Shown: positions 1,470 to 14,034 of the stretch, one piece after another
How the letters are laid out: each line of letters starts with the position of its first letter
Position numbering within the stretch: position 1 is the stretch's first letter
Source: Trichoplax adhaerens
Lineage: Eukaryota > Animalia > Placozoa
Direction of reading: 5' to 3'
Length of the DNA: 64,000 nt
NCBI RefSeq assembly: GCF_000150275.1
Contig: NW_002060961.1
Location: forward strand, 186,001-250,000
The notes under the pieces: model-generated
Seen by the model: the letters and a program-made list of their open reading frames with translations, nothing else
Told to the model about the DNA's origin: nothing
Databases searched by the model: none
Program-made: the position numbers and the translations under genes

Positions 1470-2590
1470 GTGACAAACCAGGTTATTCGAAAACGAGGTT
1501 AATGCCAAGGACAGCATGCTGCACGATTGGCACAAGATTGGGAAAGACATGCCTTTCATAGACAAAATGAAAAACAGGAGAAGAACGCGTGACACGATTA
1601 TCACTAGACAGAGAAAGACGCCCTGCTCAAAGACAGAATGGAACAGAAGTAGGCATGTAGTGCGACTATTACAAAATGCACTGATGCAATCCATACGAAG
1701 GAACTTGGGAAACAAGGAGCAACAGCCATGCCGTAATGCATGACCTGGACAAGCTGCAATATTGCTTTAACTAACAGATCGTCATGAAATCGGCCAATGG
1801 AATAAAAAATGCCCCAATGCAATGCATTTATATTCACTAAAGAGAAAGTCGCCAAATCAAGCCTTGGAAATTCACGATTCCAGCTCCGTTGTAAGAAAGG
1901 GAAAATTGAGCTACCGCTAATTCGATCTCCACCGTCTCAATACTTGGCGCTATTAACGGAAAGTTCAGAAGAAGCAAAGCATTTTCGTACATGCGTATAT
2001 TTTTGTGCTTATTATAATGCCTTCACCTTTACATTAAGTGGTGCAAATTTCGATTGACAACTTGTAAATGGAATAGATAGAGTATATAGGTTATACATTG
2101 CGAGAGTAAGAAAGTTTTATTCTTTTGCTGTCTGCAACTCTTATTCCTAGCGAAGACGAGCAACCCAAATTTGCCTAAATTTACATTTATAATATGGATG
2201 AACAAGTCCCCCATCGATTGAATTTCAACGATGTGCTGAATGCACCAGTTGTGGAAATGCTAACGAGATTACTTAAACAGCGAAGATTATTATGTTGCAA
2301 ATTGTGTTCCGAATTTAGAACAATTCCAGCCACAAAATACTCAACCTTATGAGCTGCTAATATAGTCCATTCCGGATCGCGATCGATGTTTCGATCATCC
2401 TACAGCTTCAGAAGTGGCTACAATTTTACCTTTTGAAATGCTATGGAATATATCTTATATCGAAATTTTATAAAGAATACATAGTTCTAGAATTGAGTTA
2501 CGATATCGAGTCATTTCCTTGGCACAGAATTGTCATAAAATATAAAAATGGGCAATGTGAAAATTTTTCAAGATCGCTTAGTCCTACGTT
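1470..2590 (+). mobile_element. Degenerate Helitron Rep/helicase N-terminal fragment
   Basis: Frame-disrupted Helitron-typical motifs in the expected order: QHAARLAQDWERHAFHRQNE (~1512-1570); PQCNAFIFTKE...CKKGKIELPLIRSPP...LLTESSEEAKHFR...YNAFTFTLSG (1809-2045); LIPSEDEQPKFA*IYIY (~2140-2190); PTASEVATIL (~2399-2428); RIVIKYKNGQ (~2526-2555). Stops and frameshifts are present. Confidence 0.8.
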
Positions 2591-3047: not shown

Positions 3048-6000
3048 ATCTTTAAGTGAAAACTCTATTGAATATATTCCATCGCATACATTTTCTACAT
3101 GGGCTCCGTTAAATGTGGTGTAAGTATTTTAATTTATAATGTAGTTATACTTTAATCTCTTGGAGTTATAATTGATTAATTGTAGCTGTTTAACAGAAGC
3201 GAAAGATTTAACTTTTAATATTTAATTAACTTACTTTAAATTTAAATGCAATATGATCAAGTGATATACATTACAATCATTGCGTGGATAATGATAAATT
3301 TCTTTTGATTAACATCTTTTTTGATATCATGAGCCCTTTACTTCCTCAGTAGATTGTACCGTAATAAATTAAATTCCATTAATAAAATGGCTTTTGGTCG
3401 TCATTCCTTATTGCAGTCATTGTAAGTAGCAAAATAACGCTGTTGAATAGTTATGGCACACTGATTAGTATATTCGCAGAGTCGTAGGAGAAAATAATTT
3501 CCGAGCCTTACCAACGGATTTATTCGAAAAAATTCCCCATCTGATAACCTTGTAAGTAAGCTATAAAAGCTTTATTATTGCTAAATTAGCGATAACTATA
3601 CTTATGCAGTACTATAAAAATACACTTGATAACCGAACTATGCTATCATATTGATGTTTGAAATGCAGCTAGAAATTACTTTTATGAAATAATACTTCCT
3701 TCTATAATGTATTTATAATATTAGGGTTTAAATTACTATACTAGACAACAAATATCATTATGCTTATCATCGACTTATAACAACCTATAAAATGCTTTGT
3801 AATCAAGTAGTAATCATCACATTAACTGTGACCAAGAAAAGTGCAGAGAGACCATATCTCTACTGATAATTATAGGATTTAATTTACTAAGCTAATAATA
3901 ACAACCAGTATTCCAATACTTCTTATAGCTATAAAGGATTAAGATTATCAATACTGAATAATGAATACATAAATATCTAACTCATGATAATATAATTATC
4001 ATTTTAATGAGAGTATTGAGATCTTCTAATATTTAATTTCGTTTGTACAGGCATGTAAATCACAATAACATTAATTCCGTTGCTAATAAAGCATTTGAAA
4101 AGCTGCGAAATCTAAAATTACTGTTAGTATTAATTTCATTAAATTAAAAGTTTACTTGCATATATTTTTAGTCAAACTTGTTTGATTAATCTATAATCTT
4201 CAATTACGAAATTTCGCAAACTTTAGAATAGCAATATCAACATTCTTGTACTTCTTTACAATTACTAGATATTTGTGATCTCTATTCAGCTCTGTAAATT
4301 GTTCATAAAGAAAAAACAACTCAAATGAAATATTTATTTATAACAGCAATTATTTTACAATGAATATAATTTAACAGTAATATGAAAAATAATGATCTAA
4401 AATACTTTGGCAAAGATATATTTTATTTACGGACAAAGTTATATCAAATGTAAGTCTAAGAGCGAAATGAGTTCTTTATTTCTTGAATATCTGCTTACTT
4501 ATTGTAGCAGTTGGTGTATAAAATTTATGCATTAAAGTTACCAGATACTACTATAGTATGTAACGTTTTCTTCAAACAGCGATTTAGGACATAATCCGAA
4601 TTTGCAACTACACAACCTAACTACTTATCAACAATTGACTGGAGCATCTCTACTGTAATAAAATATAAAATAAGACTTAATATTTTAAATTTAAAATAAG
4701 CCTTAATATTTTAAATATACTTAGTCAATACATAATGCAGATAATAATATTAATTATTGAAACAGAGCAGATTGAATATTGCTAAACTGTAGTACTTGGT
4801 TAATTATATTTATTTAACTGTTTACATTTCACAGTGATGATACGAGTAGTATTAGCCATTGATAACTTGCCTACACTAAATATTAATGACCTTTTTATTT
4901 TTAATACAGGTCATTATCAAATTGTAGTTTGAACTACTCAATATTAACTAATATTCTGAAAGACACGCCTAATTTAAAAAATATGTAAATATCTTTGCTC
5001 TTTTCGTATACCTACTAAGTAATTCTAAACGTTAAAAAAAACTACAGATGACACCAACGGTAATTTCTATCTGGGATACTGCATTAGTAAATTCTCAGAT
5101 CAGCATTAAAATACACTACTTTCCGTTATGAATGATTGTATACAAATACAGTTGATCTAGTTTCTAGTTTTTATATATTAACAAATAATGAATTTTAGTA
5201 AATGAAGGTTCTAATGCTGTAGCGATAATAAACCTGAAAAGGCAATAAACTCTTCAGCATGACATTATTTCATTTCTGAACATTAAATTTCTAAATCTAG
5301 TTGAAAGAAAATGACGCTTTATTATAATGTTAATTAAATTTTGATACAACTTAGCGAACTTATTAAAATAATAGTTAATCTATTATGCAAAAAGAAAACA
5401 TAAAAGTTTCTAACTTCCTTTCTTTACATTGTAGATGGCTATTAGGAAATAATCTATCCGGAATCAACACTAGTATATTTTCCAATCTTAAATCTATGGA
5501 TAGTATGTAAGTTTAGCGGTGGTGGATGAATAATAATAAATAAAGTATAATAATATTCCTAAATTCATTAATATAGTTCACATTATCACAAACTGATATT
5601 AAAAATGATTATATTAAATACATCAGCATACATATCATACTAACAAAACACTCTAACTACAGATTAAATTAAATATAAAAAAAAGGGCGGTATAAATCTG
5701 AAGCAACCTTTCGAATAGAAACTTTAGATTATACTCAATCAATTACTATACGGTAGTTGCATTATCAATGCTCTGGGATCTGATGTCCGACACTATCCTA
5801 ATTTTTGATTATATAAGATCTTTAAGTTATACTGGACTTTCTACTCAGCAAATTCGTCAAATTTTATCTCAAAGAACAGAGTATCGCTATCTGTAAGATA
5901 AAAGAAATGGTTTTACAATTAACAAAGCAATGTCAATTTACTGATCTCACCAGGTACTTTCATAAGCACTACTTACCTTAGTTAACATTAAAATTTTGTA

Positions 6001-9000
6001 ACAAGATCCTTGGATGGATTAGAATTACATGAATTTCCAGAAAAACCATTTCAAATCTTATCTAAAGCCTTTTATCTGTAAGTTCCATCTATCTTTACTA
6101 AACTGACTAAAATCATACGTTTTTGAAGCCATCATTTATTCATATTAACAGTTTCATACGCTTATATCTGCAACTTTTAGATCCTTGAAATCGAATGGCA
6201 TGCGCTCAATTAAACAAAAATCTTTACCCTTGCTAAGAAAATTGAATGCTCTGTGAGACATTGTAAAATAGTGCAGTCATCCATTCTAGACAGAACTGAA
6301 ATAAATACATCACAAAATACAGTATTGATCTATCACTCTTATACGAACAAGATTTTATTCAAAAATGCTACTAAAAAAGCTATCATCTAGAGCTATCTGT
6401 TATGAAGGAGGCATACAGATGCAACTTATTTTACTCGACATAACTTTACCAATACTACATCTATGACTCCATCCATTTCATTAATTACTCTCGTCATCAT
6501 TAAATATCCTTTATAAATAATTTTGAAGTCATCTTTATAAATGATTCATAATAATTAAAATAATTCTAAATTAATTTGATTTCGGTCGGTAAAATTACTT
6601 CTCGACTTGTTTTAATTACTATTAATAATATTTACCAATAAATCCGTATAGACGGTTAGACAGAAATTTATTAGGAAACGACGCTTTTAAGATCCTTCTA
6701 TCGCTGACTTCCATAGAATTATTGTAAGTTCATTTAGAATTAATATAGATTTTATAAATAACTTTAATGGTATAATCAAATAATTAAAAACATGAAATGG
6801 TAACAAGATTATCGTCAATATATGCAGCTAACATATCCCAATTCACTATTCTATTCGGTATAATCCATAATTATTTTCATAATCTAGATCAATTACTCAT
6901 AACAACATTACGGATGTCTGCCTTCCTAAAGATTTCTATCAAAGTGGACTTTCGATCGCTAATTTGTATGGTGACACTACTTTATTTAAATGAACGTATT
7001 TCATTTTGTCTTATTTCAACAAAAAATAGAATAACTCAATATTTACATTTCCAGTATAAATATAAATGCATACAAATTATTCAAGCATTATCAGCTTAAG
7101 ATTATCAAAAATTGGCTTGCGTTCAATAACATTTATGAATTCTTTTCTGTTTGCAATTAAATCTGTTATTTACTGTTTTACTTATATACTTGAAACAATC
7201 AGAGATCTTACAGGCAACAGAATCACCACCCTGACACCTTATTGTTTCCAATCATTCTCATTGCTAAATACCTTGTAAGTAACATAGTAAAGATATGTAG
7301 AATATATAGGATCTGGAAATAATAAGCAACTTACTAAAGCAATCGAGTTAAATGCAAAATGGCCATGCTCTTCTATTAACATAAAATTACGGAGATTTGA
7401 AATGGCTCAGCTATTTAACTATTATTTAGGCTGCTTATAATATTATATTAAGTTAATTATCAAAGTACTTTACACCGCTACCTTTAGCTTAGTTATAACT
7501 ATATTTGCAGATAAATGTAGTTTTGAAGTAGCGTCACATGCAATAGGATTTCATTCGAATCGATAAACTTGCTATTTTTTGCTTAATACTGCATCCGAAT
7601 GTGCGTGAATGTACACCCTTTTACGTCCATATTCTATTTTATGAACTTCTATCGCCTGAGAATATTTCATCGCATTTTGTAAATTCTGTTAGATCTACTT
7701 TAGAGGTTTCAACATATGCAATGAGGTAGTATTCACTATCTGACAAACCCAGTTCTCTTTTGATAAATAGTTTATTTGATTTATTTATCGCAGACTATGT
7801 TATCATGGAAAGTAATTTGAAATCCATTAAATGCAGATGTTAAATTATGAAGATTAAATGTAATTTAATTGCCGGCGAATATATACGTATCTACCAACAT
7901 AGATTTATGATAAAATATAGAACGAGAGGTTATTCGTCTTTGTGTCTTATCCTCGGAAGCAGAACAAGATATTCTCATTGCGCTACTACATAATATGTTC
8001 AATCTACCAGACTAGGAACTTATTCATATTATATTATAAACAAACTGAATTAAGGGTGTAATTTTTACATTCATAATTTCAGTCAATCTAAATATAAGCC
8101 TAACTGTTAGGACTGTAATGAAAATGTGCAATTATCTTTAAAAATTTTACCTTTCGTATAACACCTCATATATAATACTAGCTTCAAAATGGTATTATAC
8201 GATATCGTATTCATTAATTTCTCTATATTTCTGATTCTATAATAGTTTCATGACCGTAATGTACTAGTTCGTAGTGCACATGTTTATTGTATATGTTATG
8301 TATATGTCGTATACAATGTCCATAAGCGCATACAACGCAACATTTAGCCATGAAATTTAATTTAGATAAAATTTTTCACGTAATGCAGGATTAATGAGAA
8401 ACATAGCGCTATACTGTCAATATGCATACATGTTGATAGCTAACATAAATAGTTCATTAATTAAGAATACACGGCTAGATGAACTATTGCTGGCAGTATA
8501 ATTTACTGTACGTAGTACTTTGTGAAGTCTCAGCTACGGAGTCTATAACAGTAAAAGGCGATAACTAAATTTGTTTTCAACTAAGTCAGCTAGTGTAAGC
8601 AAACTTACTGTAGACTAACACAACTTGATACTAATAGTTAATTGAACTAGTAGACATCTTTTTAATAAAAATATTTCAATTCAGCTCAACAAATGTTAAG
8701 ATGCATTAACATTGCTGAGAAGAAATTAGCATCGTATCGATGAAATACTATACTATAGTATCGACGTAAATCGTAGGTACTCAGTTCGCACAATGTGTAA
8801 TTATGCATTATTAACTTTATTTTCATGAGCGTCGTCGAAATCAATTTCGTAAGCATAACTACCATATATTTATAAAGGTGAATTGGCCTTTATAGCATGC
8901 ATGAGAGCGATTTTGTCTATTAATAGGGCTCTAACCCAATCTTGATTATGCTAACTGAACTTTTAAAGTGACAAAGGTCTAGTCGAATATGATCCACATT

Positions 9001-12000
9001 TGAAAATGTTCTCTCTCAAAAATGTTTAATCAATTTATTACAGACTAGTAGAATAAGTAATAATTACATATCGGCGAGATTAGTATGAATCACAACCTGA
9101 TTATAGGCTTATCAATGTTATTATAATTGTCGGAAAATACTAAAAGATCAAAAAATTTAAGTTTTATTATTAACACAATTCATTCTCAACTTCAACACTA
9201 TGATTGTCTATTAATGATTCGAAATAGATACTACACAATTCGTAGTCTTACACAATAAAGAAAGTCTACTTATATTCTGATATCAATTATTATTACTATC
9301 ATATCTGTAGCTATACTTCTAAATGAATATTTTTTATACTTTCAATGTCATTGCTCATGCAGATTATTCATGAAATGCTTAAAAGAAACTGATATGATTG
9401 ATCGATTATATATTTTTTTTAGAACTTTATCAGATAATCCGCTTATTATTTTCAGTAAACAAGCGTTTCGAAGTAGTAACTTAATAAAATTGTATGTATG
9501 TATTCTTAACATCGATCTACAATTATTTACGATTCATGTTTCTTTTACTTATAATCAGTCTATATTCATAGCCTATTATTAAACAACTAGAACCAAGCAA
9601 CAATTAAAATTTATTTCTCTACTATAGTACTATGATAAAAGTAGAGATTATACGTAATATTAATAATTTAATCCTGTACTCGACTTCGAGTAGACATTCC
9701 AGTCGTGAATATCTATGCTGCGTTACAATGTCACTAGTGACAGACTGCCAACCACTACCCGATCAATTTACACTTTCTACTTGTACCGATATACTCTCCC
9801 ACACCCTTTTACGAGTTTTTATTTGGATGATTGGTGTTATTTCTGCGATCGGAAATTTTATTGCTATCATATGGCATACTAAAAGTATGACAAAAGAATT
9901 TCAAGTTGTTAAAACATTACTTATTAACTTATCTATAGCTGACTTCACTATGGGTATCTATTTGATCAACATTGCATCAGCAAATATCTATTTTGCAGGA
10001 ATTTATTCTGAATATTTGGAAACTTGGCTTCGTAGTCCATTTTGTTCAATAGCTTCTTCGTTAATTACATTATCGAGTTTTATGTCGACTGTTATCTTAT
10101 TTTTGATTAGCCTTGATCGATATTGGGGTCTAGTATACATGTTTGATAACTATCGCTTATCCTACCGTTTTGTTGTGATATCATTATCCTTGTCGTGGGT
10201 GCTATCTATTATTTACATTGGATTGCCAGTCATCTATAGTATTAATCAACCTAGCCAATATCGTTTCCATGGTACAAATGGTGCTTGTATACCCGGTAAT
10301 CTATCGAATACGTACTTCCTGATATGGTTAATATTTTATTGTGCTTTTACTTTTGTAATATGGATAACGATTAGTATGATGTATATCGCCATGATTGTAA
10401 CGTTAACACGTATTCGAAAGCAAGCTAATCGTCAGATATCATCGGTAGAGAAGATTATCCAAGCTAAAATGATAGCTATTGTTATTACTGATCTCATCTG
10501 TTGGATGCCATTATATATCGTCTTACTTCGATTCTTATTTGGCTATGGATTAGATACGCATTCCTTACCGTTTATTGCTGTATTATCATTGCCAGTGAAT
10601 TCATGTATTAATCCAATTTTTTATACCATATTTACTCGAACATTCCTCAATAAAGCTAACAACATGATACGACAACTTCGAAATATCTTAACATTATGTC
10701 AAGTATATCTTTATCAGTGCCATAGCAATTCCAGTAGTCAATCATTCGGTAGGTATAAAATTTTCTACAATGCTATAAAATTTCATTAGGAGATACTTGA
10801 TATTTGTTAGTTAGGAGAAAAAACGGTAGTGTTGATGATATTCGGCATTAGTTATAAAGTAAGAAAATGCCATCATCATCAGGGATAGATTAATCTCTAG
10901 ATCTAATATTGCGATGGATTTGCATCCATATGACCGCATAGCCGTTGATATAATTAAGCTGGTACTGCAGTAAATATATGCGCAGATCGATTTAAGTAGG
11001 CAAAATAGGACTGATTTGGACAATGCTAGTATTTCTATTAGGTTCTTTGGATATCTAATCAGAAGAGTTTATCGATTGCTAAGAGTAAGATGAGAAAGTC
11101 TCTTAAAAGACTCTTGTAAAAGCACCGTATTTAATTGCAATAGAAAATTTTGCTCGCATTTAGCTAGGTACGTAGACTCTATTATTTACCGCGACTATTT
11201 TATGAGCGTATTATTCCCACTACAATCTTGGTATAAATATGAATCAGAGCCATCCACAAACCTCAAGGAATTAAGCAATACAATTACCTTTGGACGTATA
11301 GAATTGATAAAGAACATAGATCACTTTAACAATCTATTGTAGTATGCAGCTTTAATCACAGAAAATTGCAGATGTACTTCTAGTGCGATACTATGAATTA
11401 ATAAGTACTTTCCATATTCTCAGTTGTCAATATTCTATTGATGATGAAATACGAGTAAATAACTACAGTTTTCTATAATGATATAGATAGTAATTGGTAT
11501 TGGTGAATTCGCTACTAATTCAGTGGTTTCTAATTGCATATAAATAGGAATTACAATTCTATTCTACATATAACTAAGCCAATACTGATTACAAATATTA
11601 TAATTATGGCATAAATGTAGAAACATCAGGCGAAAATCACAAAGATATATCAATTCTATCGAAAGAAACAAAGTGCTTAACTCAGGTATATTCTCACTCA
11701 GATTTATATCTGTAATATTGAGATCGTTGACTTATTTACTGTGTTGTAACTTTGTCGTCGTCATAATTATATACAGATATAATTCTATATAAAAGTTTTG
11801 TGATTCTTTCCCTAGACATATTACAAAATTAAACTGACAGATAAAAATAATAACGGCACCTTTGGTTTAATAAAATTTTACGATGCAAATAACAAGAAAG
11901 ATTGGCAAAGTGAAAATAAATTCTACAGGGTTATAGCATCAAACAAATTTCAATTGCAAAACATCATACAATTACTATCGTTAGCTAAAGAAACGGAACA

Positions 12001-14034
12001 TAACATTATAATGGACATGCCATTTAACGATATTTATCAAAAACTGTAAGGCTTAAAAATTTTTATCGTTATAATGTAATTTATATGCCATCGTTAAATG
12101 CTTTTGTATCTGTTTCATACACTATCATTTCAAATAGACATAATACACTATATTTACTGTATAAATGTTTATAATAACCTATTTCGTCAAACTTTGCGAA
12201 ATTGATTAATTATTATATATTACCATATCCATAGCAATCCAAATTAACCGAAAACTATGTTAAATTTATAAACTTATAGTTCAAAAAATAAAGTTGTTTA
12301 CTCAGTCGCAATTAAAACTGAAAACTTTCTTTCTGTCAATAAGAATACTCTCTTACACACAAATATCAGACCTAATTACTGAAGAAATAAAAATAATAAA
12401 TGAATGTCTTTACAGTAATATAATCTTGCTTCATTGATGCTTCTCTGATGCGACTAGATGTTATTCTATAAATCTACGAAATAATGTTTAGATAATCAAA
12501 GCGATTCTAAAAGCTAGAATATTATTTTTCGAATAGATGCCTATATAGTTTAACCTCATATCTAAACTAAAAGTATCAAAATTAACTTTAATTAAGCTAT
12601 AGTTATAATTGTATCGGTAATATATTGTCATCTTTGGATCATCATTATTATGCAAAGGCAGAGGAATAACGTCACTCCAATAGCTTTGTAGTAGTAAATA
12701 ACTAGAACAGTATGATATTCGTAATATAAGTATCTATATAATATGTGCAATTGTGCATACAAGTAGAAGAAATTCTCTTGAAATTTGATACTGCTAATAT
12801 CATACTGATTTTACAGCACATATTATTCTTTATCTTTAGATTTTCATGTTATGAATCCCCTCACATAGATCAAGATGTACAAATTCTAAGCACATTGATT
12901 CGTTCCCAGTCAAAGGATTTGACGTCAGTCAATGTTCTACGAATTATCGAAGATATTGTAAAAGCTATTTCATCATTGCAAGCCCATTTGATCGTCCATG
13001 GTGGTATAGATACTAATGCTATCATTATCTATATCCCAACTGCGGTATTTAATGCATAAATATTAACTATCAGTCTTAATTTTCACTTAGTACCAAGTGT
13101 CAAATTAAACTTTGCCACTGGCAAGCAATTGTACGATAATAAATAATAGCCTATATTATCATACTTAATAGACAAATGCAGCATTTTAATTGTATAATAT
13201 TATTAACTATATCTCATGAATCCTACAGTAAATACGTGTATTAATACATATGTATACATCAGTGTTAGACTCTGTTCGATAAAATTCCCACATTCAAAGT
13301 TATACGTTCAGCGTTATTTACAACTATATTGTATTTTTAACAGATCAAGCCAATTAAGGCTGTTTTAGGCAATTTTACCGCTTCTCAAATATTAGAAAAC
13401 AACCGCTCTTCAAAATTAAACCAAGAAATTGAAAACAAAATAAATAAAAATGTAACCGATCTGGCGCAATTATACTATAGCCTCAGTTCATACTGCCAAT
13501 CCAAAATAACTATGGTATCCTGCAAATATGTTATCGATAGTGAGCAAGTTTATCGTCAGAATGAATCAATCGTGAAATCTCTGGCTAGTTTCTGCCTATT
13601 AATCATCTGTATTGCTTTAGCAGCATACAAAATACTTATTATGATCAGACACATGCCTACAATTACCACCACTACAGCATGCAGTTTTAATTTCTAAATA
13701 ATTAAAATATATATAAAAAAAAAATAGATGGAGTTAGTAATTGCCTCTGCAAACATCATCAGTTTTCTGAAAGGTAGTTGAGGTATTGCCTTTAATTTCC
13801 ACATAGAATTGATATAAAATACAATATGTTTCAGCTAGATTTCTAGTATTATATTTATAGGATTGATCAAGAACCGATCTAATAAATCTCATATTTATAT
13901 TTTATCAGTTAGAAAAAGAAATATCTGCCATAAATAATCATCAACGGCTAAAAACTCTGCAGGATTATCGTATTGACCATATCTTGCCAGTACTTCAAGA
14001 CACAATCAAAAATCTTACTGATATAAATGACTGA
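3048..14034 (+). CDS. LRR-containing rhodopsin-class GPCR (LGR type C / RXFP-GRL101-like) with a predicted C-terminal pseudokinase domain; 5' end not found
   Basis: LRR exons at 3048-3119, 3350-3421, 3480-3551, 4051-4122, 4378-4449, 4580-4654, 4910-4984, 5435-5506, 5818-5892, 6006-6077, 6181-6252, 6652-6723, 6888-6965, 7203-7274 and 9423-9491 (all AG/GT-bounded, phase 2, 69-78 bp). Hinge plus 7TM exon 9694-10748 (YLCC..CQP..DQFTLSTCTDIL, NLSIADF, SLDRY, TDLICWMP, NSCINPIFY). Phase-compatible downstream exons 11621-11685, 11816-11979, 12840-13044, 13344-~13514 and a tentative last exon 13909-14034. Confidence 0.85.
9694..10748 (+). other. Hinge and 7TM domain exon of the LRR-GPCR
   Basis: ORF 9632-10789 has seven hydrophobic segments, DRY, CWMP and NPIFY motifs and a short Cys hinge typical of type C LGRs. 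Confidence 0.95.
11816..13514 (+). other. Protein-kinase-fold (pseudokinase) exons downstream of the 7TM
   Basis: TYYKIKL..GLIKFYDANNKKDWQSENKFY..QLQNIIQLL (subdomains II-IV), VLRIIEDIVKAISSLQAHLIVHGGIDTNAIII (VIa/b), KAVLGNFTAS (VII), NKNVTDLAQLYYSL (IX-like). Confidence 0.75.

What the first reader, a model, noticed from the sequence alone, without database searches (positions are those of the whole stretch)
3048..14034. LRR-GPCR fused to a C-terminal TGF-beta-receptor-like pseudokinase (GPCR-kinase chimera)
Seen in sequence: after TM7 the frame leaves at a donor (10748|gtaggt, phase 1). It continues through AG/GT-bounded, phase-compatible, stop-free exons at 11621-11685, 11816-11979, 12840-13044 and 13344-~13514. 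These give TYYKIKLTDKNNNGTFGLIKFYDANNKKDWQSENKFYRVIASNKFQLQNIIQLLSFSCYE..VLRIIEDIVKAISSLQAHLIVHGGIDTNAIIIY..KAVLGNFTAS. Established knowledge: this follows kinase subdomain order, and IKFY..KKDWQSE..FY..QNII closely recalls the activin/TGF-beta receptor motif VAVKIF..DKQSWQNE.EVY..HENIL. Animal LGRs normally end in a short unstructured tail. Inference: one receptor couples an LRR ligand-binding ectodomain, a G-protein 7TM and an intracellular kinase-fold module, which could be a lineage-specific signalling architecture. The ORF track hides it because the domain is split over small exons.
Basis: partly seen in the sequence, partly recalled or inferred. Interest (0 to 1): 0.92.

Follow-up and report, generated by a model that had tools for sequence, protein, structure and literature searches.

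The report
LRR-GPCR with spliced pseudokinase tail
This Trichoplax gene joins a hormone-receptor-type GPCR to a catalytically dead protein-kinase domain; it is one of about 16 such genes in the genome, and the papers I could search do not describe this receptor design in animals.

Summary
The window is Trichoplax adhaerens DNA. The hinge+7TM exon (9628-10748) ends in a phase-1 donor. It continues through a 65-nt mini-exon and three larger exons that encode a kinase-fold domain. One junction is wrong: exon 3 runs to 12045, not 11979. The 3' end is unsettled (donor 13571 or about 13607; last exon 13909-14034).

About 16 paralogous LGR loci, plus one distant one, keep the same order, strand, intron positions and phases. 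Twelve LGR paralogues without a tail lack the phase-1 donor. Public gene models already join the parts. RDD41878.1 matches the first five exons of this locus at 100% identity and the last exon over most of its length.

The EB exon profile alone hits protein kinases (E 1.4e-5). AlphaFold models match kinase domains at Z 15-16, and TGF-beta/activin receptor kinases rank first. The Gly loop, HRD Asp, catalytic Asn and DFG Asp are missing, so it is a pseudokinase. The tail is under purifying selection (dN/dS 0.28).

Recent surveys of GPCR-kinase fusions report none in animals beyond sponges, and a review of the 46 Trichoplax LGRs never uses the word kinase.

This scan had already found the same family on two other pieces of this genome.

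The parts
3048..9491 (+). LRR ectodomain, split into many short exons of about one repeat each. Examples that read as LRRs lie near 3049-3120, 3345-3422, 3478-3552, 4049-4120, 5433-5507 and 7201-7275. The last one, 9423-9491, has exact boundaries. The 5' end of the gene was not determined.
   Evidence: LRR-like open stretches on the + strand. Single-exon Pfam LRR_8 hits are weak (E 0.0014 and 0.037). Full-length paralogue models carry LRR_8 at E 8e-38 and 4e-24. Boundaries of 9423-9491 were read.
9628..10748 (+). Hinge plus complete 7TM exon (rhodopsin class). The DRY and NPxxY motifs are present. It ends in phase 1.
   Evidence: Pfam 7tm_1 E 2.8e-25. Acceptor at 9627|9628, in phase with exon 9423-9491. 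52-60% identity to about 15 paralogous 7TM exons.
10749..10754 (+). Splice donor GTAGGT, phase 1, 38 nt before the stop of the read-through frame.
   Evidence: A phase-1 donor-like site in the same place occurs in 11 of 12 tail-bearing paralogues. It is not found as a pattern in 12 tail-less LGR controls.
10787..10789 (+). In-frame stop (TAG) that would end the protein if the intron were retained.
11621..11685 (+). Linker mini-exon, 65 nt. It enters in phase 1, leaves in phase 0, and encodes 21 Ser-rich residues.
   Evidence: It is identical in public model RDD41878.1. Paralogues have candidate mini-exons of 62-68 nt with the same phases. It is too short and divergent for tblastn.
11816..12045 (+). 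Exon EA, the kinase N-lobe: beta2, beta3 Lys, alphaC Glu, beta4 and an insertion. Phase 0 in, phase 2 out.
   Evidence: 12 of 12 paralogues share the same boundaries and phases. (public model). (alignment A2). (the only PDB hits are the TGFBR2 N-lobe, E 0.24).
12840..13044 (+). Exon EB: beta5, hinge, alphaD, alphaE, degenerate catalytic loop (HGGID..) and beta7.
   Evidence: 13 loci share the acceptor and donor. The profile of this exon alone hits protein kinases in the PDB at E 1.4e-5 to 1e-3, always at the alphaE/catalytic-loop position. In 1.84 billion representatives it hits family members and then bona fide kinases.
13344..13571 (+). Exon EC: beta8, GNF in place of DFG, a helical segment in place of the activation loop, and alphaF with its Asp. 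The end 13571|GTGAAA is the paralogue-consistent donor. The public model reads on to about 13607, through a hydrophobic stretch.
   Evidence: 10 of 10 paralogues have a GTAAG-type donor at the homologous Val codon. (extent of the public model).
13909..14034 (+). Last coding exon: 41 codons plus the stop TGA at 14032-14034. It is poorly conserved among paralogues.
   Evidence: The acceptor 13908|13909 is phase 0 and compatible with the donor at 13571. Two residues of the public model at this junction could not be placed on the window.

Best explanation
The locus is one Trichoplax adhaerens gene for a leucine-rich-repeat GPCR (an LGR, closest to relaxin and glycoprotein-hormone receptors). Its C-terminal tail is a full bilobed protein-kinase fold that has lost its catalytic residues. 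It is a receptor pseudokinase attached to a 7TM.

Shown:
- The exon chain and its phases.
- Its conservation at about 16 paralogous loci and one distant locus.
- The kinase fold.
- The loss of the Gly-rich loop, HRD Asp, catalytic Asn and DFG Asp.
- The retention of the beta3 Lys, alphaC Glu, HRD His, DFG Phe and alphaF Asp.
- Purifying selection on the tail.
- Intact DRY and NPxxY motifs in the 7TM.

Inferred:
- A protein hormone binds the LRR ectodomain and activates the 7TM, which can probably still couple to G proteins.
- The tethered pseudokinase does not phosphorylate anything. It acts as a conformational or scaffolding module that recruits or allosterically regulates a partner, such as an active kinase or an adaptor, or that mediates receptor pairing. 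Other receptor pseudokinases and the kinase-homology domains of receptor guanylyl cyclases work this way.
- The fusion arose once in placozoans, probably from a TKL-group kinase that may have been of the TGF-beta/activin receptor type, and then spread by tandem duplication.

One gene:
- The 7TM paralogues at about 50-60% identity are all followed, on the same strand and within 0.6-4 kb, by exons EA, EB and (where detected) EC. Paralogues at 39% identity or less are not, except one.
- A phase-1 donor lies before the stop in 11 of 12 tail-bearing loci, against none of that pattern in 12 controls.
- Boundaries and phases are identical for EA in 12 of 12, EB in 13 of 13 and EC in 10 of 10 loci.
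- Public model RDD41878.1 maps at 100% identity onto exons 10391-10748, 11621-11685, 11816-12045, 12840-13044 and 13344-13607. It comes from an evidence-based MAKER run that used transcriptome data (PMC6057997).
- TRIADDRAFT_60495, RDD45091.1 and RDD39592.1 are full fused models: LRR_8 E 8e-38, 7tm_1 E 1e-25, PK_Tyr_Ser-Thr E 3e-4.

Kinase fold:
- EB-exon profile against the PDB: CDKL3 at E 1.4e-5, then MST, PAK, RAF, KSR, VRK3 and others at the alphaE/catalytic-loop position.
- After the family members, the hits in 1.84 billion proteins are true kinases.
- AlphaFold2 of RDD41878.1: pLDDT 83-94 over residues 140-340.
- Foldseek: at least 500 kinase hits, probability 1.0.
- VIA-align: Z 15.0-15.5 over 205-220 residues.
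- Paralogue tail model: pLDDT 82, pTM 0.81. In an unfiltered search, TGFBR1 scores Z 15.8 and ACVR2B Z 15.5.
- The nearest ESM Atlas clusters are all kinase families.

Dead catalytic site:
- Alignment columns, and the register against LRRK2 and TGFBR2.

Selection:
- dN/dS 0.28 over 221 tail codons for a close pair. Synonymous sites are saturated in the other pairs.

LGR identity:
- The family profile hits RXFP1 at E 2e-51, then FSHR, LGR4 and TSHR.
Against: - The splice junctions therefore rest on conservation and on automated public models.
- The public model of this locus is partial. It starts at an internal Met in TM5/6.
- Some public models of paralogues are tail-only (TRIADDRAFT_61685, RDD39140.1).
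- No Pfam kinase model reaches its gathering score. The best is 20.9 bits against 23.1 in a paralogue. It is 14.2 bits for this locus's model, and 11.1 bits (E 0.24) for this locus's single exon.
- The EC-exon profile finds nothing in the PDB.
- The scaffolding mechanism is pure inference. No partner, ligand or expression pattern is known.
Confidence: 0.8

Rival explanations
1. Alternative splicing. The gene makes both a conventional short-tailed LGR, by retaining the intron after 10748 and stopping at 10787-10789, and the long pseudokinase form. The tail would then be an optional, regulated module. This adds to the main reading more than it opposes it.
For: An in-frame stop follows the donor within 5-62 nt in all tail-bearing paralogues. 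Intron retention would therefore always give a normal-looking receptor with a short tail.
Against: No transcript data were seen. A stop soon after a donor is expected by chance in 30% GC intron sequence.
Confidence: 0.25
2. Two neighbouring genes. The LGR ends at 10789, and a separate small pseudokinase gene lies downstream. The pair was co-duplicated as a block, and gene predictors fused them wrongly.
For: Some public models are tail-only. I saw no RNA evidence for the 10748/11621 junction.
Against: The phase-1 consensus donor at the end of the 7TM frame is specific to the tail-bearing clade. The first tail exon enters in phase 1 and EA enters in phase 0 at an acceptor, so neither offers an independent start. 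Order, strand and spacing are kept at about 17 loci on at least 9 contigs, with 7TM divergence down to 32% identity. Two independent annotation efforts fuse them.
Confidence: 0.07
3. The tail is an atypical but active kinase that uses relocated catalytic residues, as WNK or CASK do.
For: The beta3 Lys and alphaC Glu are kept in this copy, and the Glu is invariant in the family. The fold is complete.
Against: There is no Gly-rich loop. The HRD Asp position holds G, N, S, C, H, F or D among paralogues. The catalytic Asn position is A or S in nearly all paralogues. The DFG Asp position holds N, K, S, G, E or D. Positions this variable argue against a conserved alternative catalytic mechanism.
Confidence: 0.06
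4. The tail exons are decaying relics of an old fusion and no longer contribute to function.
For: Some copies are clearly broken: C1394:267-271k has stops, and C1404 is a fragment.
Against: Frames are open and splice sites are consensus at 10-13 loci, despite 25-45% protein identity. dN/dS is 0.28. The AlphaFold models are confident.
Confidence: 0.03

Closest known systems
Animal LGRs (relaxin receptors RXFP1/2, GRL101-type receptors, FSH/TSH/LH receptors, LGR4-6)
   Same: An LRR ectodomain encoded one repeat per exon, a Cys-containing hinge, a rhodopsin-class 7TM in one large exon, and DRY and NPxxY motifs. The family profile hits RXFP1 at E 2e-51, then FSHR, LGR4 and TSHR. Public names are 'GRL101-like' and 'Relaxin receptor 2'.
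   Different: From general knowledge, known LGRs end in a short unstructured tail. Here the 7TM exon splices on to about 290 further residues that form a kinase fold. The review of the 46 Trichoplax LGRs never uses the word kinase (PMC9545775).
GPCR-TKL/K of acanthoecid choanoflagellates, and GPCR-TK of choanoflagellates and sponges (eLife 2025, PMC12716839)
   Same: A 7TM receptor with a C-terminal domain of the protein-kinase superfamily, found in Holozoa. The kinase is of TKL or TK type.
   Different: Those 7TMs cluster with no known GPCR family, or fail to form one family. This 7TM is a bona fide rhodopsin-class LGR. Pfam and InterPro detect those kinase domains, and the paper does not use the word pseudokinase. 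This one falls below the Pfam threshold and lacks the catalytic residues. [quoted passage not shown]
GPCR-bigrams (GPCR-TKL, GPCR-PIPK) of oomycetes and Amoebozoa (PMC5784254, PMC6033456)
   Same: The design principle is the same: a GPCR fused to a C-terminal signalling domain of kinase type. Multigene families arose by expansion.
   Different: The lineages and the 7TM classes differ. Those domains are treated as catalytic. [quoted passage not shown]
TGF-beta/activin receptor serine/threonine kinases (STKR family, TKL group)
   Same: They are the best structural matches: TGFBR1 Z 15.8, ACVR2B Z 15.5, and ACVR1, ACVR2A and TGFBR2 at Z 15.0-15.5. The N-lobe motif K-x-[FY]-x(4-6)-W-x-x-E-x-x-[FIV]-[FY]...N-I aligns with TGFBR2, which is the only PDB hit of that exon profile.
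   Different: There is no GS box and no activin-receptor ectodomain. The catalytic residues are lost. There is an insertion between beta4 and beta5. No intron position is shared with the two Trichoplax type-I-like receptor genes, and there is no significant profile score against them. RLK, IRAK and RIPK kinases are structurally within 1 Z.
Receptor pseudokinases and kinase-homology domains (receptor guanylyl cyclase KHD, ROR/RYK/PTK7, HER3, plant NFR5). This comparison rests on general knowledge.
   Same: A membrane receptor carries an intracellular kinase fold without catalytic residues, and the fold works as an allosteric or docking module. NFR5 and IRAK3 pseudokinases are among the structural matches.
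   Different: Those receptors are single-pass. Here the pseudokinase hangs on a 7TM GPCR.

Membership tests
Rhodopsin-class GPCR (Pfam 7tm_1) | Seven-helix domain scoring above the Pfam gathering threshold | tested here: met
   89.7 bits against a cut-off of 30.5, E 2.8e-25, profile positions 4-260 of 260.
Rhodopsin-class GPCR (Pfam 7tm_1) | Activation motifs: D/E-R-Y at the end of TM3 and NPxxY in TM7 | tested here: met
   LDRY and NPIFY were read in the ORF translation. This was checked by eye, not by a numbering tool.
LGR (LRR-containing GPCR) | N-terminal leucine-rich repeats on the same polypeptide as the 7TM | tested here: inconclusive
   About 8 or more LRR-like mini-exons lie on the + strand upstream. 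Two give weak LRR_8 hits (E 0.0014 and 0.037). The last LRR exon, 9423-9491, is in phase with the 7TM exon. Full-length paralogue models have LRR_8 at E 8e-38. The complete exon chain and the 5' end of this copy were not reconstructed.
LGR (LRR-containing GPCR) | 7TM most similar to known LGRs | tested here: met
   The family profile hits RXFP1 at E 2e-51, FSHR at 1e-37, and LGR4 and TSHR at about 1e-36.
Protein kinase superfamily (fold) | Bilobed fold: N-lobe sheet with alphaC, and C-lobe with alphaE, catalytic loop and alphaF | tested here: met
   AlphaFold2 models have pLDDT 83-94 in the domain. Foldseek gives at least 500 kinase hits at probability 1.0. VIA-align gives Z 15-16 over 200-220 residues.
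Protein kinase superfamily (sequence) | Pfam Pkinase or PK_Tyr_Ser-Thr above the gathering score | tested here: not met
   The best score is 20.9 bits against 23.1 (paralogue TRIADDRAFT_60495). This locus's model scores 14.2 bits. The single exon scores 11.1 bits (E 0.24). However, a 13-sequence profile of one exon reaches kinases at E 1.4e-5.
Catalytically active protein kinase | Gly-rich loop GxGxxG | tested here: not met
   The residues that align with the TGFBR2 loop, upstream of beta2, contain no Gly motif in this copy or in the paralogues.
Catalytically active protein kinase | beta3 Lys and alphaC Glu | tested here: met
   The Lys is present in this copy and in 10 of 12 paralogues. The Glu is invariant, in register with TGFBR2.
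Catalytically active protein kinase | HRD catalytic Asp and catalytic-loop Asn | tested here: not met
   This copy reads H-G-G-I-D-T-N-A. The Asp position is Gly and the Asn position is Ala. Both positions vary among paralogues. The register comes from the LRRK2 alignment.
Catalytically active protein kinase | DFG Asp | tested here: not met
   This copy has G-N-F. An Asp occurs at that position in only 2 of 11 aligned copies.
TGF-beta/activin receptor kinase family (STKR) | Kinase domain closer to STKRs than to other kinases | tested here: inconclusive
   STKRs are the top two of 48,161 chains and most of the top 50, but other TKL kinases are tied within 1 Z. The N-lobe profile hits only TGFBR2, at E 0.24. 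The catalytic-loop profile prefers CDKL, STE20 and RAF kinases.
TGF-beta/activin receptor kinase family (STKR) | Activin-receptor ectodomain and (type I) GS box | tested here: not met
   Pfam Activin_recp and TGF_beta_GS match only two other loci in the genome, on contigs C1412 and C1408. None is near the LGR tails.
GPCR-TKL/K and GPCR-TK (choanoflagellates, sponges) | 7TM or kinase domain clustering with those families | not tested
   No sequences of those families were at hand. The paper reports that its searches found no such protein in metazoans other than sponges, although T. adhaerens was in its sample.

The most novel reading that the evidence does not exclude
The tail descends from a TGF-beta/activin-type receptor kinase. 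It lets these placozoan hormone GPCRs signal without G proteins, by docking onto or allosterically switching an active type-I-like receptor kinase or another partner. That would wire an LGR directly into a receptor-kinase pathway, and the 16-fold expansion would make it a major placozoan signalling system.
Probability: 0.12. Interest if true: 0.9.

Novelty: new variant of a known kind. Interest (0 to 1): 0.7.

Why it matters
GPCRs fused to kinase-type domains are known from oomycetes, amoebozoans, choanoflagellates and sponges. None has been characterised functionally (PMC12716839). The surveys I read state that such fusions are absent from other animals. Here a family of about 16 genes in an early-branching animal puts a kinase fold on a receptor of a well-understood class, the LGR hormone receptors. 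Ligands, structures and signalling assays exist for that class in other animals.

This makes an open question testable: what does a kinase-type module do on a GPCR? The family also adds a clear case of pseudokinase evolution by domain fusion followed by expansion. And it shows that the 46 annotated Trichoplax LGRs are not all conventional.

The proteins are already in public databases, partly under automatic names such as 'Protein kinase domain-containing protein'. The novelty is therefore in recognising and describing them, not in new sequence.

Tried and rejected
- The search for homologous proteins with the tail region found only the query itself.
- Ten short family fragments from ENA and Logan carry no names or taxa, so the family's range outside Trichoplax is unknown.
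- Single-exon Pfam scans gave nothing significant.
- The EC-exon profile has no PDB relatives.
- A three-sequence whole-tail profile hits only kinases, but at E 0.2-0.6.
- Alignment A6, which mixed whole tails with single-exon rows, was misaligned by MAFFT and was discarded.
- TALE-repeat hits at E 1e-16 are a repeat-summing artefact.
- Test for descent from a Trichoplax TGF-beta receptor gene: intron positions are not shared, and the family profiles do not score those genes. There is no support, but also no refutation.
- The accessions of these proteins were not found in the held supplements of the LGR review.
- Literature searches combining placozoa or rhodopsin-like 7TM with pseudokinase found nothing relevant.
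- Joined step left out: I sent no joined spliced model of the window's exons to any search or folding tool. Exons were searched one by one by reference. Whole-protein work used public database proteins returned by the tools.

Full report
WHAT THE WINDOW IS
The window is G000:C1396:186001-250000, from a 105.6-Mb assembly of 1414 contigs with about 30% GC. Public proteins TRIADDRAFT_60495 and TRIADDRAFT_61685 sit on contigs whose lengths equal those of G000 contigs C1400 and C1390. A Trichoplax sp. H2 protein maps onto the window (100% over its first five exons, about 90% over the last). The genome is therefore Trichoplax adhaerens.

THE OBSERVATION
The ORF 9632-10789 is a rhodopsin-class 7TM (Pfam 7tm_1, E 2.8e-25) with LDRY and NPIFY motifs. 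Its ATG is internal. The exon starts at the acceptor 9627|9628 and is in phase with the last LRR exon, 9423-9491. Upstream, back to about 3048, the + strand holds a string of mini-exons, each about one repeat long, that read as LRRs. Two of them give weak LRR_8 hits on their own.

They are phase compatible and stop-free.

Two corrections follow from the comparative work below.
- The third exon ends at 12045|GTAAGG, not at 11979.
- The end of the 13344 exon is uncertain.

A MULTIGENE FAMILY WITH ONE FIXED ARCHITECTURE
I searched the whole genome with the translated exons one at a time. There are 17-20 matches to exons EA (11816-12045) and EB (12840-13044), and fewer to EC (13344-). The 7TM exon has 115 matches. 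The roughly 15 with 49-67% identity are exactly the ones that lie 0.6-4 kb upstream of an EA-EB-EC set on the same strand. The next-best 7TMs (39% identity or less) have no tail, with one exception described below.

In 19 fetched loci the structure is the same.
- The 7TM frame carries a donor-like site in phase 1, 5-62 nt before its stop, in 11 of 12 loci. In 9 of these the site is GT[AG]AGT or GTAGGT.
- In 12 tail-less LGR paralogues used as controls, 5 have no donor-like site after NPxxY. The rest have scattered sites in mixed phases.
- A candidate mini-exon of 62-68 nt (phase 1 in, phase 0 out, Ser-rich) follows.
- EA is 224-239 nt in 12 of 12 loci. It starts at an acceptor in phase 0 and ends in a (C/T)T|GTRAG-type site (one weaker GTTCGT) in phase 2.
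- EB has the same acceptor and donor in 13 of 13 loci.
- EC starts in phase 0 at ..tag| in all loci. In 10 of 10 it ends at a GTAAG-type donor (one GTATGT) that falls on a conserved Val codon after a W-x(6-7) motif.

In the window the homologous donor is 13571|GTGAAA. It is phase 0 and fits the acceptor 13908|13909 of the last exon. Reading on past it, as the public model does, adds a hydrophobic stretch that the paralogues lack.

A profile of EA also picked up a much more divergent LGR on contig C1407, whose 7TM is 32% identical. It has EA-, EB- and EC-like exons and the same L|gtaagt donor. The fusion is therefore older than the core clade.

Some copies are broken (C1394:267-271k, C1404) or sit on small contigs that look like uncollapsed duplicates.

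PUBLIC GENE MODELS
I searched a profile of the single exon EB (alignment A1) against 1.84 billion representative proteins. It returned family members first.
- P0011 is RDD41878.1, named 'G-protein coupled receptor GRL101-like protein' [Trichoplax sp. H2], 417 aa. It maps at 100% identity onto window exons 10391-10748, 11621-11685, 11816-12045, 12840-13044 and 13344-13607, and onto most of 13909-14031. An existing model therefore joins TM6-7 to the tail through the junctions given above. That annotation was an evidence-based MAKER run fed with transcriptomes (PMC6057997). I cannot tell which junctions had read support.
- TRIADDRAFT_60495 (697 aa) has 7tm_1 plus sub-threshold kinase hits.
- RDD45091.1 (1129 aa) has LRR_8 (E 8e-38), 7tm_1 (E 1e-25) and PK_Tyr_Ser-Thr (E 3e-4).
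- RDD39592.1 (896 aa) has LRRs and 7tm_1.
- UniProt names two tail fragments 'Protein kinase domain-containing protein'.

IS THE TAIL A KINASE FOLD?
Single exons of this copy give nothing significant in Pfam (PK_Tyr_Ser-Thr E 0.24). Several other lines of evidence do support a kinase fold.
- The 13-sequence EB profile hits protein kinases in the PDB at E 1.4e-5 (CDKL3) to 1e-3 (MST1/2, PAK1, RAF1, KSR1, VRK3, VPS15). Every hit lies on the alphaE/catalytic-loop stretch. Five stronger TALE hits are a repeat-summing artefact.
- In the large library, the hits after the family are genuine kinases, led by multi-kinase-domain proteins.
- The EA profile's only PDB hits are the N-lobe of TGFBR2. The E-value is 0.24, which is not significant alone, but the hit is collinear and in the right place.
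- EC finds nothing.
- AlphaFold2 of RDD41878.1 with a 44-row family alignment gives pLDDT 83-94 over residues 140-340. Foldseek returns at least 500 kinase domains at probability 1.0. VIA-align gives Z 15.0-15.5 over 205-220 residues, spanning model residues 123-397.
- A second model, of the tail-only paralogue TRIADDRAFT_61685, has pLDDT 82 and pTM 0.81. Against 48,161 PDB representatives without a Foldseek prefilter, it ranks TGFBR1 (Z 15.8, 205 residues, rmsd 3.8) and ACVR2B (Z 15.5) first. Rice RLK, RIPK, IRAK1/4, NFR5 and RIP3 follow. These are all TKL-group kinases. Other groups follow at Z 14.5 and below.
- The nearest ESM Atlas clusters are all kinase families.

PSEUDOKINASE
I used the registers given by the TGFBR2 and LRRK2 alignments and the family columns.

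Lost:
- There is no Gly-rich loop.
- HRD reads H-G-G in this copy. The Asp position holds G, N, S, C, H, F or D across copies.
- The catalytic Asn position is Ala.
- DFG reads G-N-F. An Asp is there in only 2 of 11 copies.
- There is no APE motif. The models put a long helix there.

Kept:
- The beta3 Lys is present in this copy and in most others.
- The alphaC Glu is invariant.
- The HRD His, the DFG Phe and the alphaF Asp are kept.

The tail is under constraint. dN/dS is 0.28 over 221 codons for the closest usable pair. The other pairs are saturated at synonymous sites, while pN is 0.33-0.50.

TGF-BETA-RECEPTOR LIKENESS
Trichoplax's two type-I-like receptor genes (found with Activin_recp and TGF_beta_GS) share no intron position with the tails and do not score with the family profiles. 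I file the tail as TKL-like and possibly STKR-derived.

LITERATURE
- van den Hoogen et al. 2018 (PMC5784254) describe GPCR-TKLs in oomycetes and Amoebozoa. They state that GPCR-bigrams are rare or nonexistent in metazoans.
[quoted passage not shown] T. adhaerens was in their sample. They note that no such receptor has been characterised functionally.
- The review that counts 46 Trichoplax LGRs contains the word kinase zero times (PMC9545775).
- Other searches found nothing relevant.

The library does not cover subscription journals, so an earlier description elsewhere cannot be excluded.

MECHANISM
Shown: the architecture, the fold, the dead catalytic site, the purifying selection, and the intact 7TM activation motifs.

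Inferred: a protein hormone binds the LRRs and activates the 7TM. G-protein coupling is probably retained. The tethered pseudokinase serves as a docking or allosteric module, or as a pairing interface, as other receptor pseudokinases do. An intron-retaining short isoform that ends at 10789 is possible and untested.

LIMITS
- I saw no RNA reads.
- I sent no joined spliced model of the window's exons to any search or fold. Exons were searched one by one by reference. Whole proteins were public database entries. One search joined the exons in a script only to check frames.
- The 5' end of the gene, the exact LRR exon chain and the last two junctions are not settled.
- Two residues of the public model at the last junction could not be placed on the window.

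EARLIER FINDINGS OF THIS SCAN
The scan had already reported the same family from two other pieces of this genome, with the same reading (s1-771347, s1-760346). My counts and conclusions were reached independently, before I read them.

Noticed in passing
L056 = G000:C1407:2278500-2285500, minus strand (7TM 2283714-2285111, EA-like 2282932-2283168, EB-like 2282594-2282827, EC-like 2282050-2282508): A far more divergent LGR, whose 7TM is 32% identical to the window's, also carries EA-, EB- and EC-like exons with the same L|gtaagt donor. Its catalytic loop has lost even the His-Gly. The GPCR-pseudokinase fusion therefore predates the core clade of about 16 genes.
   Followed up: partly
L038/L040/L041 = G000:C1404:1069000-1086000 (EB 1078767-1078967, EC 1080588-1080829): An isolated EB+EC pair with a stop inside EC, and no 7TM or EA within 10 kb upstream. 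It is probably a decayed partial copy. Its EB reads H-G-D-I-S-M-D-N, which keeps an Asp and an Asn at the catalytic positions.
   Followed up: partly
L057 = G000:C1412:805500-811500, + strand, 1948-2367: A lone open frame with an EA-like motif (GWLEY..KERKKWKREKSF) and no other family exon nearby. It is a relic or a chance match (20 bits).
   Followed up: no
L032 = G000:C1394:267000-271500: A family copy with stop codons in the 7TM, EA and EB exons. It is a pseudogene inside the C1394 tandem cluster, which holds six family members between 134 kb and 354 kb.
   Followed up: no
L025, L036 (contig C1288) and L039 (contig C1266): Small contigs carry copies that are nearly identical to loci on C1394 and C1400. 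They are uncollapsed haplotypes or very recent duplicates, so the count of about 16 genes may be slightly inflated.
   Followed up: no
L054 = G000:C1412:1679000-1687000 (+) and L055 = G000:C1408:4973500-4982500 (-): These are the two Trichoplax TGF-beta type-I-like receptor genes (Activin_recp ectodomain, GS box, active HRD and DxG motifs). One encodes the kinase almost wholly in a single exon. The other has introns after VAVKIF, after the alphaD region and inside the DLG motif.
   Followed up: partly
window 13572-13697: Reading through the paralogue-consistent donor at 13571 gives a 20-residue hydrophobic stretch and a stop at 13695-13697. The public H2 model includes part of this stretch, which is probably a mis-chosen donor.
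   Followed up: partly
window 1474-1740 and surroundings (1000-2500): A region of higher GC (0.38 against 0.28) with an 89-residue open frame lies upstream of the LGR. It is probably part of a neighbouring gene and was not examined.
   Followed up: no
L026 and L031 (contig C1394), inside the 7TM exons: Runs of N interrupt the 7TM frames of two paralogues. They are assembly gaps or withheld stretches, so these copies could not be judged intact.
   Followed up: no
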